DNA of 64,000 bases from Ylistrum balloti (lineage: Eukaryota), in contig NW_026782484.1 in the NCBI RefSeq assembly GCF_031769215.1, positions 744,001-808,000 of the forward strand, written 5' to 3'. Positions within the stretch are counted from its first letter, which is position 1, and each line of letters begins with the position of its first letter. The position numbers were made by a program, and so were the translations under genes. Shown in pieces: positions 35,590 to 41,134 of this stretch. The notes beneath the pieces were generated by a model, which was not told the origin of the DNA, searched no databases, and saw only the letters and a list, made by a program, of their open reading frames with translations.

Positions 35590-38500
35590 CTGAAAACAAG
35601 ATGTATTTCCATTTGAACTCCCATATAATGACATTGAAAAATATGACTTTTCTCAATTTAAAACATGCATATAGAAAATGAAAACAAGACATCACACCTC
35701 ACCTTAAAGTTAATCAACATTTATGCTATTCTATATAAAAGACTCATTTGTATTTAAATCCTAATCTAGATTAATCTATAGAAAGGAGGTCTGATGGAAA
35801 TTAATTAAGTGCTCCAAGAGAATTGCTCAGACAGGATTATCTGGACAAACACCCTAACTTTACTACAAGAGGTATAACTACGACAGCTATTATTTTGGGT
35901 GGACTATAATATTGACCAATATACCTCTGATGACCAGCTGTATCATAGTGTGGATTGTACACTTGACCAATATACCTCTGATGACCAGCTGTATCATAGT
36001 GTGGATTGTACACTTGACCAATATACCTCTGATGACCAGCTGTATCATAGTGTGGATTGTACACTTGACCAATATACCTCTGATGACCAGCTGTATCATA
36101 GTGTGGATTGTACACTTGACCAATATACCTCTGATGACCAGCTGTATCATAGTGTGGATTGTACACTTGACCAACATACCTCTGATGACCAGCTGTATCA
36201 TAGTGTGGATTGTACACTTGACCAATATACCTCTGATGACCAGCTGTATCATAGTGTGGATTGTACACTTGACCAATATACCTCTGATGACCAGCTGTAT
36301 CATAGTGTGGATTGTACACTTGACCAATATACCTCTGATGACCAGCTGTATCATAGTGTGGATTGTACACTTGACCAATATACCTCTGATGACCAGCTGT
36401 ACTGTAGTGTGGACTTTAATATTGACCATACCTCTGACCACTAACTGTACAGTAGGGTAAACTATGATATTGACTCATATACCTCTAATGGCCTGGATGT
36501 TTGCAGCACATACAAACAGATGACTCAGGCGCACATAGATGTGGCTGTAGTTTTTCCCCCACAGTACAGCAGGGATCACAAGGATTTTACCAAAGTTGGA
36601 TAGCAGCACTCCACGCATCAACTCTTCTGACCTGCCAAATATAAAAATGATTCTGTTCAAAGCACCAAGTGGAAACCATTCCGCAAAATCAAATAAGAAA
36701 TGAGTTCTTATACAACATACAAATGTCTATGAAATTGGCTTACCTAAATTCCTCTGTAGAAACCATCCTAATGCATACAATGATTATTGAAACAACAATG
36801 ACCAACTCTGTAATAGAAATAAAATGGTAAACATTTCACTGCCATTTAGTAATGTAAATCATCATAACATCAGAAATAGATATCTGTGTTTCATGTTTCA
36901 CAGCCATCCCTGTTTTTTGCTACTGAATCTAATTTTTTATTTTTTTGCACATTTTCGTCAACAGTTTTATTTGATGATGATTTCCAGCAGTATTAGTAAC
37001 TTCAGGCAAATTCATCACAGACACTACACATCTATTTATACAGACCATGTCAAACATTCTCTCAACATCTAACTGTCTAGGATGATAGCAATCACCATGC
37101 TGTCATTGGTTTTGACAGTGAAATTCATAAAATACACACACATGCATAAAAATATCATAACTTTCACAAAAACTAAGGATGAGATCAGGTGTTTCAGACA
37201 AGTATGCATCTTTCTGGAAGTGATAATTCTGCATTGCTTTAAACCATATTTCTATTTGTTTATTTTCGCTTTTTCATTTTTTTTTCTTCATCCCGCAAAA
37301 AAGTTGGGGGAAGGTATATAGGATTAGAAATCACCAAGTATGTCTGTCTATTCATCCATTATTTTATAAGTGCAACGCTTCCTAAACCATTTGATAGAAT
37401 TTCATTGAAACTTGGCACTTGACATTACAGGAAAAAAATTATTTTAAAAAATCAAACATCATAGATTTTCTGACATGGATTTTGATATTAGACATGACAC
37501 ACAATTCAGAAAAAAACTTTAAATACATACCTGACACATCAGGTATACTCTAATCCTAATCAGCATGCCATACTTAAGATGTAATGTCTTTATTTTAAAA
37601 ATAAAATCCTTTAAAAAAAATCTTTACCTACAAACCCTAATTTTTTAAGAAACAGGAACAGGATTTTTTTCATTAGATGTTGAGTACTTTTACCTTATAA
37701 CTAAGGTGTTACCTGTCAAACTGACACTGAATAGTTACTTACTTATCATATATATTGTTGTTTGATAGCATGACACTAAAGTGTTACCAGTACCTATTAA
37801 TGCAAGACTGAAATTTTGATATAGTCCCCATTCCAACGCTGAATAGATCATGTAATCAGGGCGAAGGTGAGATTCTCCACTGCTCCGATGCTCCAGCAAC
37901 AGTTTTGTAAATGCATCACAGAGAAGTAAGATGGCCACTAACTTCCAGTGTCCCTAAAATAAATAATGGCAGCTAGCTGTGGTCACTTTCAAGTGTCATG
38001 AAAAAAAATTGTGACATTACTGATAGTAAGCCAGTGTCTATACAAGCATACCATTAAAACTGTCATCCTATACTAATATATCTTACAAAGTTATTTCTGG
38101 TGGAAAATAAACAACATTTTGCTTTAAAACACAATTTTCTATAAGAATTATAGTAAAGTTAACCTCTATAGAGAGAAATGTGATATTCATTTTGGTAAAG
38201 CTCCTTAAGACAATTAAGAACATTTGATGCTACCATATCTGGTTGTTGAAAAGATTTTTTAAATTCAAGTCAGTTTGATCCCTTCTGGCCCCACCCATCA
38301 ACCCCTGGGGGATCAGTCATGATCAATATTAGCATACCATCAAGCCATCATCATTTGCTCATAATTCTACCCAAGTTTGAAATATTTCCAATTGAAATTA
38401 AACAAATTTTGCTCATTTGTTTTTCATTTTCTCCTATATAAACTGTAGTAAACTTTACCCCCTCCTTGTGTGGAAATGTTGGACCATTTGGCCATGAAAT

Positions 38501-41037
38501 TCACAATTTTGGTAAGGCACATCAAGATGCTTTTTGAGAAGAAAAAAAAAATAAAAGTTTACAGATTCACAACACACAACCCTGGACATAGGTGATAGCA
38601 CTAGGTCACTCGAGACTTTGTCTCAGGTGACCTAATAATTTTTTCAAAGTGACACCATTGCTGTGAATCCCATTTCTTATACACCTGTAATTTAGTTTGT
38701 GAAAAATAACAAAGCAGAACCTTCAAGATAATACTTGTGACACATGCTGTATTTATATTTCTTTTTTTTTTATTAAAGTACCTCTGTACATAAAAGTAAT
38801 AATATCATTTCTGACAGCTTACCTGTGTTTTCTTGTTGTACAAAACATGTCGAAATGCTTGCTGCTTCAATAGTAAAGCATCCAAACAAACGATAACTGG
38901 CTCTGACTCAATGTATTTATCTACAACCTTTTGACAGTTTTTCTGAAACACAATTTATAGATTGCACATTTTGAAATACAAATGCATATTCAATTATTTA
39001 TAAATGTACTGACAGCAAAATGATCCAAGTTTGTCATATATGTCTCCTCTGATAATAATTCATATATGTGTAACAAGAAGGAGCAATGAAAAACACTCTC
39101 CCCTTAAGTTTCTACAAAGGTACAGACAGCCTGTGGAGTTCCTGCTTGTTATAAAAGTATGTTTTCTGACACATTGACAATTTCCAATTTCTTGATCATC
39201 TATTGACAGAAGAAAGTTGCCTCTTTTCAAAATCAGTTCTATTTTCAATAGCCATGTTCTCTTTCATATTATGGAATAAGGGAACATTTAATGCAAAACA
39301 AAGTAGGCACCTGCTGTGTGCCAAGGAGATACATGTTAATAGTCTGAAAGGTTTTGATTATCTATCCATTACTTTACTTTTGTCTTGCTATTGGTTGTGA
39401 GAGTTAACTTTTTGTTAGGTTTACAAGTGTAACTGTAACAGAGGTCATTATTTATTTCAATGCCTCCGCTAGGAATCGAACCCGGGACCCCTGGCTTACT
39501 AGCCTGACGCTCAACCAATCGAGCTAAAGAGAAGTTCTCTCTAGTCGAGTGGTATATTGCGGCTAGTATTTTAACAGGGTTACATAATCCCCCTCCAGGA
39601 AATAACTCGTTCTGGAGTTTCCAGGGGTTACAGCGATGCTGGTGGGGCATGGCTAAGTACTATTCACGGGTCCCTACATGGGCGCCAATGTAACAGAGGT
39701 CATTATTTATTTCAATGCCTCCGTTAGGAATCGAACCTGGGACCCCTGGCGTACTAGTCTGACGCTCAACCAATCGAGCTTAAGAGAAGTTCTCTCTAGC
39801 CGAGTGGTATATTGCGGCTAGTATTTTAACAAGGTTACATAACCCTTGTAAAATACTAGCCACAAAATACTGCTCGGCTAGAGAAAACTTCTCTTTAGCT
39901 TGATTGGTTGAGCATCAAACTAGTAAGCCAGGGGTCCTGGGTTCCATTCCTAGCGGGGGCATTGAAATAAATAATGACCTCTGTTACATAAGAACAAGAT
40001 TAGCAGGAATCTGTTGTGGCAGCCATTGCAAAAAATTTGGAGAGTTGTTTGGGAAAATGAGTGAAAATACAACATTTCATTACATTGACAAATACTTATG
40101 TTAGTAGATAATTGTTTTATCTTTCTATCCATGTATGATTTATAACTATCATGCTGATGTAAATTAAAAGAAATATTGCCTGATTTCTGGTTATGATAGA
40201 GGAAGCAAAACAAGATGTTGTTTTTATTTCAGGAGGAATCTGACTACCGACCGTACAAAGATAAAAATAAAATCACAGATAAATTGTGAGAACACTTCAG
40301 ACTTGAACATTCGAGCAACAAATCAACCATAGTACTCAAACATTTTATATTTGAGAGACAAGATTTTAGTTCACAGATATAACATGTATTTTTCCTCGTA
40401 AAAAAAATAAACAGGTAATCCACTTGTATTGAACTGTTGAAACACTTTACGACTCACGCAACTAAGTAAGCCATTGAACGACTAGGGATTCTGTTTCAAT
40501 CTGTTAGTCCCTACCAAAATTTAGATTTGGTAAAAGAAATCGTCCTCTGTGGGGACGGAATTCATAATTTATAATGAATGAAGGAAATCTGCATAATCAG
40601 ACTTCATAAAAAATTGATTTGGGACGGATTCAGACAGGTGTAAAATGTCGGGGGTTTCACTTGTAAACTTCCGGTTAATGAGTTCTGAAGGCGATGACAG
40701 TACGAGATGCCATTAAACCTACTAAATTATGTCCTTTGCAGTCTTCGACAAGTATGCTTCTATGAATCTAAACAGTTGTTACTTGTGTCGAAGTTCAAAT
40801 ATTAATGTTTTAGCTTTAATTCTAAGTAATAACATATAGTGACTTATTTATTTGCATGGGTCCTTTACATCGACATTGCACAGTTGCACGTTGCGTTTTA
40901 AGTTTCTATTTCCTTACACAGTGCTCAATTTTGATGATTCCAGATTTAAAATCACGATAGAGTTGGTCAGCAACACTTCCACAGCCAATACATTTGTAAT
41001 CCCGTGTATGTAATGCCAATTCGGTTTGAGTGGTCAT
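35474..41037 (-). CDS. ARV1: ARV1, ER membrane lipid-homeostasis / GPI-biosynthesis factor, complete 242-aa CDS in 6 exons
   Basis: Minus-strand exons 41037-40918, 38942-38823, 37953-37794, 36807-36744, 36631-36483, 35589-35474 (729 nt, phases consistent). Arv1 homology domain CIGC-x20-CKNC QKVVDKYIESEPVIVCLDALLLKQQAFRHVLYN, then WKLVAILLLCDAF, and LLSNFGKILVIPAVLW..ANIQAIRV, all matching known ARV1 motifs. Confidence 0.93.
35890..36445. repeat. Near-perfect minisatellite, 51-bp unit, about 10 copies, in ARV1 intron 5
   Basis: gaccaatatacctctgatgaccagctgtatcatagtgtggattgtacactt; open in four frames because the unit length is a multiple of 3. Confidence 0.97.
36483..36631 (-). CDS. ARV1: ARV1 exon 5
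   Basis: ggcag|SEELMRGVLLSNFGKILVIPAVLWGKNYSHIYVRLSHLFVCAANIQAIR|gtatat. Confidence 0.92.
36744..36807 (-). CDS. ARV1: ARV1 exon 4
   Basis: tacag|ELVIVVSIIIVCIRMVSTEEFR|gtaag; phase 1 in, phase 2 out fits both neighbours. Confidence 0.85.
37794..37953 (-). CDS. ARV1: ARV1 exon 3
   Basis: tttag|GHWKLVAILLLCDAFTKLLLEHR..ALEWGLYQNFSLALI|gtact. Confidence 0.92.
38190..38636 (-). mobile_element. Non-autonomous Helentron/HINE-like (pearl/CvA-like) interspersed repeat in ARV1 intron 2
   Basis: Terminal hairpin AGGTCAC-tc-GAGAC-ttt-GTCTC-ag-GTGACCT (38603-38633); its reverse complement closely resembles the end at 62226-62260. The family assignment is from recalled architecture; boundaries are approximate. 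Confidence 0.5.
38823..38942 (-). CDS. ARV1: ARV1 exon 2
   Basis: ttcag|KNCQKVVDKYIESEPVIVCLDALLLKQQAFRHVLYNKKTQ|gtaag. Confidence 0.94.
39428..39988 (+). mobile_element. Older solo LTR of the same family, opposite orientation, split by the TRIM insertion (39428-39433 + 39844-39988)
   Basis: Removing the TRIM and one TAAC restores a 151-bp TGTAAC..GTTACA unit similar to the TRIM LTRs. Flanks CAAG/TAAG are a possible 4-bp TSD with one mismatch. Confidence 0.85.
39434..39839 (-). mobile_element. TRIM-type non-autonomous miniature LTR retrotransposon (406 bp) with tRNA-derived LTRs
   Basis: Two 151-bp direct repeats (39434-39584, 39689-39839; 7 substitutions by eye), each TGTAAC..GTTACA. 104-bp internal region with PBS TGGCGCCCATGTAGGGAC (39687-39670) and PPT GGAGGGGGA (39596-39588). 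TSD TAAC at 39430-39433 and 39840-39843. Confidence 0.9.
40918..41037 (-). CDS. ARV1: ARV1 exon 1
   Basis: ATG at 41037; MTTQTELALHTRDYKCIGCGSVADQLYRDFKSGIIKIEHC|gtaagg. Confidence 0.92.
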
Positions 41038-41134
41038 ATTCACAACTACAGCTGTTTATACTTTCACTTTCCAAACCGGAAGTTTCTAGTTGAGACCAAC
41101 AGCTGGAACCAGTTCATTCACTTCCGGTTTGACC
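41038..41134. promoter_or_regulatory. Bidirectional ARV1/POP7 promoter with an inverted pair of ETS (GABP-type) motifs
   Basis: 97 bp between divergent ATGs; AAACCGGAAGT (41073-41083) and ACTTCCGGTTT (41120-41130) form a perfect 11-bp inverted repeat. Confidence 0.75.

What the first reader, a model, noticed from the sequence alone, without database searches (positions are those of the whole stretch)
39434..39839. Intact 406-bp TRIM-type miniature LTR retrotransposon in ARV1 intron 1
Seen: two 151-bp LTRs (TGTAAC..GTTACA, about 95% identical, 7 substitutions by eye) around a 104-bp non-coding core. On the minus strand, 1 nt after the 5' LTR, is an 18-nt PBS TGGCGCCCATGTAGGGAC. It matches 14/18 to the vertebrate tRNA-Lys(UUU) PBS TGGCGCCCGAACAGGGAC, including the CCA-complementary TGG. 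A PPT GGAGGGGGA lies 3 nt before the 3' LTR, and a perfect 4-bp TSD (TAAC) flanks the element. Established: this is the TRIM layout; TRIMs are common in plants and rarely reported in animals (some have been reported in bivalves), and a 4-bp TSD fits metazoan Ty3/gypsy integrases. Inference: it is mobilised in trans by an autonomous gypsy element with the same termini and PBS.
Basis: partly seen in the sequence, partly recalled or inferred. Interest (0 to 1): 0.8.

Follow-up and report, generated by a model that had tools for sequence, protein, structure and literature searches.

The report
Helenus-type miniature LTR retrotransposon, scallop intron
This is a real 406-bp non-coding "miniature" LTR retrotransposon sitting in the first intron of the ARV1 gene, but it belongs to a group (Helenus, TRIMs with a tRNA-like piece in their LTRs) that was already described in scallops and other bivalves in 2024, so it is a well-documented example rather than a discovery.

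Summary
There are two 151-bp LTRs (7 mismatches, 95.4%), a 104-bp core, a PBS 1 nt after the 5' LTR, a PPT 3 nt before the 3' LTR, and a TAAC duplication. Sense is the minus strand. The genome holds roughly 200 internal domains and 1,000 LTRs of this family. Of 20 full copies, 18 carry a perfect 4-bp TSD of their own, as do most solo LTRs. Mean LTR identity is 97.2% within an element and 95.6% between elements. The PBS matches the host's own tRNA-Lys(UUU) 3' end 18/18. The LTRs carry a degenerate tRNA-like module with A and B boxes. That makes this a Helenus/TRIMp3 element (Kojima 2024), closest to the published scallop families Helenus-1_PeMa, Helenus-2_ArIr and Helenus-1_MiYe. Its dimensions match none of the listed families. 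It inserted 6 bp inside an older, oppositely oriented solo LTR of its own family. One low-copy Ty3/gypsy family shares a 27-nt LTR-end/PBS junction and is a candidate helper, unproven. Pol III transcription is inferred, not shown. The scan noted a Helenus-like element elsewhere in this genome (s1-254296). Interest is low: a new member of a known kind.

The parts
39430..39433 (.). Left copy of the 4-bp target-site duplication (TAAC on +, GTTA on the element's sense strand)
   Evidence: It is identical to 39840-39843. These 4 nt are bases 3-6 of the older solo LTR.
39434..39584 (-). 3' LTR (151 nt, TGTAAC...GTTACA) of the TRIM
   Evidence: 95.4% identical to the other LTR.
39461..39533 (-). Degenerate tRNA-like module in the 3' LTR. 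Box A reads TAGCTCGATTGG and box B reads GGTTCGATTCC.
   Evidence: the Rfam tRNA model aligns end to end (1-71/71) but scores only 13.5 bits (gathering score 29). ARAGORN calls no tRNA. It is 48/74 identical to the host tRNA-Lys(UUU).
39585..39688 (-). 104-nt non-coding internal domain
   Evidence: It is conserved at 92-95% in other copies. Its layout matches the internal parts of Helenus-1_PeMa and Helenus-2_ArIr.
39588..39596 (-). Polypurine tract GGAGGGGGA, 3 nt (TTA) before the 3' LTR
39670..39687 (-). Primer-binding site TGGCGCCCATGTAGGGAC, 1 nt (T) after the 5' LTR
   Evidence: a perfect 18/18 complement of the 3' end (+CCA) of the host tRNA-Lys(UUU) genes.
39689..39839 (-). 5' LTR (151 nt)
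39716..39788 (-). tRNA-like module of the 5' LTR, placed by the 255-nt register with 39461-39533
   Evidence: The position is inferred from the register. This copy was not scanned separately.
39840..39843 (.). Right copy of the 4-bp TSD (TAAC)
39428..39433 (+). First 6 nt (TGTAAC) of an older solo LTR of the same family, split off by the insertion
   Evidence: Reading across the element restores TGTAAC|CCTTG..., the normal LTR start.
39844..39988 (+). Remainder (LTR positions 7-151) of the older solo LTR, in the opposite orientation, 89% identical to the element's LTR. Its flanks are CAAG (39424-39427) and TAAG (39989-39992), a 3/4 TSD.
40909..41055 (-). Open stretch that contains ARV1 exon 1 (...YKCIGCGSVADQLYRDFKSGIIKIEHC)
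   Evidence: Pfam Arv1 positions 2-27, 21.6 bits (cut-off 20).
38493..38972 (-). Downstream ARV1 exons (Arv1 profile positions 17-147, with introns)
   Evidence: 59.2 bits, the only Arv1 locus in the genome.

Best explanation
The stretch is one copy of a Helenus-type TRIM ('TRIMp3'). It is a 406-bp, non-coding, non-autonomous LTR retrotransposon whose 151-bp LTRs each carry a degenerate tRNA-derived module. Shown here: its anatomy, its family, its integrase-type 4-bp TSDs and its primer. Inferred: its RNA is reverse-transcribed from host tRNA-Lys(UUU) annealed to the 18-nt PBS, and plus-strand synthesis starts at the PPT. Also inferred: the cDNA, ending in TG...CA, is inserted by the integrase of an autonomous Ty3/gypsy element acting in trans. 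The best candidate helper is a low-copy gypsy family with the same ...CTGTTACA-T-PBS junction. The tRNA-like A/B boxes most likely act as an internal RNA polymerase III promoter, as Kojima proposed for Helenus, and the sense strand carries no TTTT terminator. This copy landed in the first coding intron of ARV1, in the gene's orientation. It inserted 6 bp inside an older, oppositely oriented solo LTR of its own family. It is a relatively old copy (LTRs 95.4% alike) and was present in all four individuals examined.
For: Structure.
Family: 2,363 first-look candidates, with 40 or more scored copies full-length at 92-95%. About 199 internal and about 1,009 LTR sites lie within 3 mismatches of 28-mers.
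TSDs: 18 of 20 full copies have a perfect, independent 4-bp TSD and the other 2 match 3/4. Seven of 11 sampled solo LTRs have a perfect 4-bp TSD.
LTR identity: mean 97.2% within an element (two copies at 100%) against 95.6% between elements, as expected when LTRs are identical at insertion.
Primer: 11 host loci carry GTTCGAGTCCCTACATGGGCG. ARAGORN calls tRNA-Lys(ttt) at 6 of the 10 fetched. Their 3' end plus CCA is the exact 18-nt complement of the PBS.
tRNA-like module: the tRNA covariance model aligns over its whole length at 13.5 bits. The A box (TAGCT...TGG) and B box (GGTTC) fit the Helenus motifs given in PMC10886601.
Homology: the 18-nt PBS string occurs in the paper's Data S1 only in Helenus-2_ArIr-I and Helenus-1_PeMa-I. 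By eye, the LTRs and internal parts of those families and of Helenus-1/3_MiYe are colinear with ours.
Candidate helper: an element with a PNMA-like gag and a PR-RT-RNaseH-IN pol. It has TGTAGC...GTTACA LTRs, PPT ...GGGAGGAGTA, and a 27-nt stretch identical to the TRIM across LTR end, T spacer and PBS. One copy's LTRs are 99.7% alike.
No TTTT on the sense strand in 19/20 copies, against 2-4 on the antisense strand.
Tandem forms: LTR-core-LTR-core-LTR arrays occur, as known for TRIMs.
Against: No RNA data could be obtained, so neither pol III transcription nor current activity is shown. The tRNA-like module scores below every tRNA threshold. The lack of TTTT is close to a single observation, because the copies share ancestry; about 1.5 runs would be expected by chance. 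The helper assignment rests on only 27 nt, similar termini and TSDs in low-complexity DNA. At least five other LTR families in this genome use the identical PBS, and several also end in GTTACA or GCTACA. That homology rests on exact-string hits and reading by eye.
Confidence: 0.93

Rival explanations
1. It is an ordinary pol II-transcribed TRIM. The tRNA-like piece is a passive relic of a SINE or tRNA that once landed in an ancestral LTR and has no promoter role.
For: The module is degenerate: 13.5 bits against a gathering score of 29, no ARAGORN call, and a broken anticodon stem. No transcript data exist. Some other Helenus families in Data S1 carry a TTTT inside the LTR just after the tRNA-like part (read by eye). 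That sits awkwardly with full-length pol III transcripts.
Against: Boxes A and B and their spacing are kept across the scallop families, while the LTR tail diverges (by eye; PMC10886601 Fig. 2 legend). The sense strand of this family has no TTTT. The element is short, within pol III range.
Confidence: 0.3
2. It is two independently inserted tRNA-derived SINEs that happen to flank a 104-bp spacer.
For: The 151-bp repeat contains a tRNA-like module, and most genomic copies are solitary: 16 of 20 sampled loci.
Against: The whole 406-bp unit recurs with a conserved core, PBS and PPT, and its TSDs flank the whole unit. Solitary copies have fixed 4-bp TSDs and TG...CA ends with no A-rich tail. That is what LTR-LTR recombination leaves behind.
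Confidence: 0.01
3. It is a 255-bp-period tandem repeat (a satellite-like array) rather than a mobile element.
For: Several loci show LTR-core-LTR-core-LTR with 255-bp spacing, and there are sub-repeats of LTR segments.
Against: Most copies are exactly one unit plus one LTR, dispersed on many contigs, each with its own 4-bp TSD. Tandemised TRIMs are a known by-product (PMC6934838; PMC10886601).
Confidence: 0.02

Closest known systems
Helenus (TRIMp3) families of Pectinidae: Helenus-1_PeMa, Helenus-2_ArIr, Helenus-3_MiYe, Helenus-1_MiYe (Kojima 2024, PMC10886601)
   Same: The layout is LTR-PBS-core-PPT-LTR with a tRNA-like module carrying A/B boxes in each LTR, and a 4-bp TSD. The first 19 nt of the internal part (TTGGCGCCCATGTAGGGAC) are identical to 1_PeMa and 2_ArIr. 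The LTR start (TGTAACCCTGGTAAA.TACTAGCCGCAATATA) and the end of the internal part (CCTGGAGGGGGA.TA) are the same. The LTR length (151) and LTR tail (GGCATTGAAA..AATAATGACCTCTGTTACA) match Helenus-1_MiYe.
   Different: The dimensions 151/104/406 match none of the 13 listed scallop families: 159/105/423, 160/105/425, 159/107/425 and 151/115/417 for the four closest. The sequence is roughly 85-90% alike by eye. It combines the 1_PeMa-type PBS and LTR head with the 1_MiYe-type LTR tail. The paper assigns this PBS group to tRNA-Lys-CTT, using Aplysia with about 9-10 nt of match. Here the host tRNA-Lys(UUU) gives 18/18.
Cassandra (plant TRIM with 5S rRNA-derived LTR module)
   Same: It is a miniature LTR retrotransposon whose LTRs carry a small-RNA-derived pol III promoter, and it also forms tandem arrays.
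   Different: Its module derives from 5S rRNA, not tRNA. It occurs in plants, makes 5-bp TSDs, and is longer (565-860 bp). There is no sequence relation.
biv-TRIM (Satovic et al. 2019, PMC6934838)
   Same: It is a TRIM of bivalves with solo repeats and tandemised forms.
   Different: biv-TRIM has 202-218-bp repeats, a 77-80-bp core, PPT GGGGAGA, a conserved TGATCCCAAAGGAC motif and no canonical PBS. The element here has 151-bp LTRs, a 104-bp core, a perfect PBS and none of that motif (core sequence).
tRNA-derived SINEs (SINE2)
   Same: They are short, non-coding and high-copy, with tRNA-like A/B boxes. Kojima proposes a SINE2 as the source of the LTR module.
   Different: SINEs are mobilised by LINEs and have variable TSDs and 3' tails. 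This element has LTRs, a PBS, a PPT and fixed 4-bp TSDs.

Membership tests
TRIM (terminal-repeat retrotransposon in miniature) | Two short direct terminal repeats ending TG...CA around a short non-coding core, under 1 kb in total | tested here: met
   151 + 104 + 151 = 406 bp, with TGTAAC...GTTACA ends. There are no gag or pol genes; 406 bp cannot hold them.
TRIM (terminal-repeat retrotransposon in miniature) | A PBS complementary to a host tRNA 3' end next to the 5' LTR, and a PPT next to the 3' LTR | tested here: met
   18/18 match to the host tRNA-Lys(UUU)+CCA, 1 nt after the LTR. GGAGGGGGA lies 3 nt before the 3' LTR.
TRIM (terminal-repeat retrotransposon in miniature) | Dispersed copies, each with its own fixed-length TSD, plus solo LTRs | tested here: met
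   18/20 full copies have a perfect 4-bp TSD. 16/20 sampled LTR loci are solo, and 7/11 of those checked have a perfect 4-bp TSD.
Helenus / TRIMp3 (Kojima 2024) | A tRNA-derived sequence in the LTR, with box A (TRGCY...YGG) and box B (GGTTC) | tested here: met
   TAGCT..TGG and GGTTCGATTCC are present. The Rfam tRNA model aligns 1-71/71 at 13.5 bits.
Helenus / TRIMp3 (Kojima 2024) | Animal members make 4-bp TSDs | tested here: met
   The paper's Table S1 lists 4 bp for all bivalve families.
Helenus / TRIMp3 (Kojima 2024) | Sequence homology to published bivalve Helenus families | tested here: met
   The exact 18-nt PBS string is found only in Helenus-2_ArIr-I and Helenus-1_PeMa-I of Data S1. 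Colinearity of the LTR and core was read by eye.
Helenus / TRIMp3 (Kojima 2024) | [quoted passage not shown] | not testable with these tools
   No RNA runs hold the locus. The only indirect sign is the absence of TTTT on the sense strand. The paper also leaves this point untested.
Cassandra | A 5S rRNA-derived module in the LTR | tested here: not met
   Rfam scans give no 5S hit. The module is tRNA-like.
biv-TRIM | 202-218-bp repeats, a 77-80-bp core with a TGATCCCAAAGGAC motif, and PPT GGGGAGA | tested here: not met
   Neither the lengths nor the motifs are present in the element.
Retrozyme | Hammerhead ribozyme motifs in the repeats | tested here: not met
   There is no hammerhead hit, even at E up to 10.
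Mobilised by Ty3/gypsy | An autonomous element that shares the termini, PBS and TSD length | tested here: inconclusive
   A gypsy family (PR-RT-RH-IN) shares a 27-nt junction and the GTTACA end. Its TSDs look 4 bp long, but they lie in low-complexity DNA. Other LTR families share the PBS.

The most novel reading that the evidence does not exclude
The tRNA-like module is a working internal pol III promoter. The whole TTTT-free genomic RNA of this scallop TRIM would then be made by RNA polymerase III and copied and inserted by a pol II-driven Ty3/gypsy helper that shares only the LTR tip and the tRNA-Lys(UUU) PBS. That would be the first experimentally tractable animal case of a pol III-driven LTR retroelement with an identified helper. 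As a side effect, the back-to-back inverted LTRs in the ARV1 intron would give a ~150-bp hairpin in the pre-mRNA.
Probability: 0.3. Interest if true: 0.5.

Novelty: new member of a known kind. Interest (0 to 1): 0.2.

Why it matters
The main value is as a clean, fully dissected example of an already described class. Helenus/TRIMp3 elements are abundant in this genome, at around a thousand LTRs. They scatter tRNA-like pol III promoter boxes through genes, which inflates tRNA-gene predictions and may affect neighbouring genes much as SINEs do. Two small additions go beyond the 2024 description. First, the primer is the host's own tRNA-Lys(UUU) with a perfect 18-nt match, whereas the paper inferred tRNA-Lys-CTT from a sea slug. 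Second, there is now a concrete candidate Ty3/gypsy helper sharing a 27-nt junction. Neither changes the picture of how such elements work.

Tried and rejected
ARAGORN on the whole window found no tRNA. Rfam at E up to 1 gave only weak miRNA-model hits (MIR9408 at 42 bits against 90, and mir-240) over 39779-39899. These are artefacts of the long hairpin formed by the two back-to-back inverted LTRs, not miRNA genes.

The origin of the tRNA-like module is unresolved. It is 48/74 identical to host tRNA-Lys(UUU), 47/75 to tRNA-Arg(UCU) and 42-43/75 to tRNA-Gln.

I looked for an empty site or insertion polymorphism. Four DNA runs, under two organism labels, were laid on the locus. In all four, flank contigs run 24 nt into the element at 39434-39457, and contigs on the other side start inside the solo LTR. 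No joint skipping the element was listed. However, the contigs break inside the repeat, and 24 nt falls short of the tool's 31-nt bridging criterion. So this is weak evidence that the insertion is fixed. No RNA run holds the locus, so expression is untested.

Several other LTR elements carry the same PBS and are poorer candidates for the helper. The C359 family has TGTGGC...GCTACA LTRs and a TTT spacer. The C492 element has fragmented ORFs on the opposite strand and no TG start. C39, C578, C240 and C511 have AAT, AAA or C spacers. Beyond the 27-nt junction, I found no similarity between the TRIM core or LTR and the candidate gypsy.

I did not type the published Helenus consensus sequences into any tool, because they have no reference. 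That comparison is by exact-string search and by eye only. I built no consensus of the TRIM or of the gypsy family. The big protein searches and structure tools were not needed.
Full report
THE OBSERVATION. Window 39434-39584 and 39689-39839 are 151-nt direct repeats with 7 mismatches (95.4%), separated by 104 nt. Read on the minus strand, each repeat starts TGTAAC and ends GTTACA. The core begins with T, then TGGCGCCCATGTAGGGAC, and ends GGAGGGGGA-TTA. TAAC (GTTA in the element's sense) flanks both ends.

IS IT A MOBILE ELEMENT? A search of the window's own 648.5-Mb assembly with the 406-bp unit gave 2,363 first-look candidates. Of the 40 that were scored, nearly all match over the full 406 bp at 92-95%. 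Blast of the LTR and core separately shows most loci are exactly LTR-core-LTR with sharp ends. A few are LTR-core-LTR-core-LTR with 255-bp spacing, and a few carry short tandem sub-repeats of LTR segments. In 20 simple copies the four bases on either side are identical in 18 and match 3/4 in the other 2, and the four bases differ from locus to locus. Pattern counts allowing 3 mismatches give about 199 PBS-plus-core sites and about 1,009 LTR sites. In a sample of 20 LTR loci taken in contig order, 16 are solo LTRs. Seven of the 11 solo LTRs checked have perfect 4-bp TSDs. The two LTRs of one element are on average more alike (97.2%; two copies at 100%, four at 99.3%) than LTRs of different elements (95.6%). 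These are the signatures of integrase-mediated LTR retrotransposition followed by LTR-LTR recombination. They are not the signatures of LINE-mediated SINE insertion or of a satellite.

THE PRIMER. A pattern built from the reverse complement of the PBS plus a T-loop found 11 loci with GTTCGAGTCCCTACATGGGCG. ARAGORN calls tRNA-Lys (anticodon ttt) at 6 of the 10 fetched loci, sitting in tRNA clusters with tRNA-Gln genes. The 3' end of that 73-nt gene plus CCA is the exact 18-nt complement of the PBS.

THE tRNA-LIKE MODULE AND THE FAMILY. Each LTR contains, in the sense orientation, a 73-nt stretch with TAGCTCGATTGG (box A) and GGTTCGATTCC (box B). The Rfam tRNA model aligns to it from end to end but scores only 13.5 bits against a gathering score of 29. 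ARAGORN does not call it. It is about 65% identical to the host tRNA-Lys(UUU) and about as close to tRNA-Arg(UCU), so it is tRNA-derived and not a working tRNA. TRIMs with such a module were named Helenus, and together with Cassandra and Ajax 'TRIMp3', by Kojima (2024, PMC10886601). The paper reports 51 families in five orders of pteriomorph bivalves including Pectinida, all with 4-bp TSDs, and with tRNA-Lys among their primers. Searching the paper's sequence file for the 18-nt PBS string finds it only in Helenus-2_ArIr-I (Argopecten irradians) and Helenus-1_PeMa-I (Pecten maximus). The printed LTRs and internal parts of these families, and of Helenus-3_MiYe and Helenus-1_MiYe (Mizuhopecten yessoensis), are visibly colinear with the element here. 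They share the LTR head, the tRNA-like block and the CCTGGAGGGGGA.TA end of the core. Helenus-1_MiYe also has the same 151-bp LTR length and the same LTR tail. None of the 13 listed scallop families has the dimensions 151/104/406. I therefore read this as a further family of the same scallop lineage, presumably in a species the paper did not cover. An earlier scan note calls this genome 'reportedly scallop', and I did not identify the species. The paper assigns this PBS group to tRNA-Lys-CTT using Aplysia. The host data here point to tRNA-Lys(UUU).

A CANDIDATE HELPER. Patterns that demand the PBS but exclude the TRIM's next bases found 12 loci, belonging to several LTR-element families. One family, on contigs C569, C1371 and C40 among others, gave about 14 LTR hits. 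It has 829-bp LTRs that start TGTAGC and end CCTGTTACA, then T, then the PBS. That makes 27 consecutive bases identical to the TRIM across the LTR end, spacer and PBS. Its PPT region ends GGGAGGAGTA just before the LTR. It encodes a PNMA-like gag and a pol in the order protease, RT, RNase H, integrase, which is the Ty3/gypsy order. One copy's LTRs are 99.7% alike over the 626 nt available. Two insertions show flanks compatible with 4-bp TSDs, but in TA- and TAA-repeat DNA, so this is weak. Beyond the 27 nt there is no similarity, which is what Kojima expects for a pol III-driven TRIM and a pol II-driven helper. Several other families use the same PBS and similar termini, so the assignment is a candidate only.

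HOW IT MOST LIKELY WORKS. Shown: the anatomy, the dispersal with 4-bp TSDs, the perfect tRNA-Lys(UUU) PBS, the tRNA-like A/B boxes, and the existence of gypsy elements with matching junctions. Inferred from established LTR-retroelement biology: tRNA-primed minus-strand synthesis, PPT-primed plus-strand synthesis, and integration by a helper's integrase acting on the TG...CA ends. Inferred more weakly: transcription by RNA polymerase III from the LTR module. In its favour, the boxes are conserved across the scallop families while the LTR tail diverges (by eye). The sense strand has no TTTT in 19 of 20 copies, although the antisense strand has 2-4. The copies share ancestry, so that is close to one observation, with about 1.5 runs expected by chance. 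No RNA run was available. The LTR RNA is predicted to fold unusually stably (z = -5.2), though not as a cloverleaf.

THIS COPY IN ITS PLACE. Pfam Arv1 matches 38493-38972 on the minus strand, the only Arv1 locus in the genome. An upstream open stretch at 40909-41055(-) carries the N-terminal YKCIGCG...IEHC motif and matches Arv1 positions 2-27. The element therefore lies in the first coding intron of ARV1, in the gene's orientation. The bases TGTAAC at 39428-39433, together with 39844-39988, form a complete older LTR in the opposite orientation, 89% identical, with CAAG/TAAG flanks. The TAAC duplication is bases 3-6 of that LTR. So the 406-bp element inserted 6 bp inside a pre-existing solo LTR of its own family. 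With 95.4% LTR identity it is among the older full copies. In contigs of four public DNA runs, the left flank runs 24 nt into the element and the right flank starts inside the solo LTR. No listed joint skips the element. The insertion looks shared by all four, but the contigs break in the repeat, so the evidence is weak.

VERDICT. The class, and very close relatives in other scallops, were published in 2024. What is added here is a perfect host tRNA-Lys(UUU) primer match, family statistics, the nested insertion and a candidate gypsy helper. The element is a new member of a known kind, and the interest is low. The scan's other notes on this stretch (tRNA-like promoter, nested insertion), and one on a Helenus-like element elsewhere in the genome, agree with this reading.

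Noticed in passing
window 39689-39988: The element's 5' LTR and the older solo LTR lie head to head, 4 nt apart (the right-hand TSD copy, 39840-39843). They form a ~150-bp inverted repeat, 88% complementary, inside the ARV1 intron. This hairpin explains the weak hits to miRNA models (MIR9408, mir-240). It could give double-stranded RNA in the pre-mRNA.
   Followed up: partly
L034:1449-2146, L035, L038 (G000 C448 and C1175): The host tRNA-Lys(UUU) genes lie in repeated clusters with tRNA-Gln(CUG) and tRNA-Gln(UUG) genes about 300-600 bp away. L033 also shows a tRNA-like gene with a 'tta' (stop) anticodon next to a tRNA-Gln.
   Followed up: no
L030:1181-1500 and L024:163-282: Short tandem arrays built from parts of the LTR sit next to or near full elements. 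One has five 64-bp units of LTR positions 1-64. The other has two 60-bp units of positions 92-151. This looks like the birth of satellite-like repeats from the TRIM.
   Followed up: no
L042 (G000:C271:824716-827738), around position 1330-1640: This is a second, more diverged Helenus-like family in the same genome. Its LTR has the same hairpin and tRNA-like layout, it has the identical PBS, and its PPT is degenerate (GGAGGAGGAGTA).
   Followed up: no
L041, L043, L047, L048, L053 (G000 C184, C359, C789, C835): This is another LTR retrotransposon family, with ~860-bp LTRs (TGTGGC...GCTACA). It uses the identical 18-nt tRNA-Lys(UUU) PBS after a TTT spacer, and its PPT, GCAGGGGGAGTA, is close to that of the published scallop Helenus cores. 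The C359 copy has ORFs of 381, 450 and 951 aa.
   Followed up: partly
L050/L046 (G000:C569:1130500-1142377): The candidate gypsy helper also occurs in a tandem form. Internal sequence lies upstream of its 5' LTR and matches the 3' end of its own internal region at 98.7%. This mirrors the LTR-core-LTR-core-LTR arrays of the TRIM.
   Followed up: partly
G000:C351:708626-710295: Two LTRs of the candidate gypsy family lie tail to tail in inverted orientation, 10 bp apart. Each is preceded by a PPT and followed by a PBS-like sequence. This is an unusual rearranged or nested arrangement.
   Followed up: no
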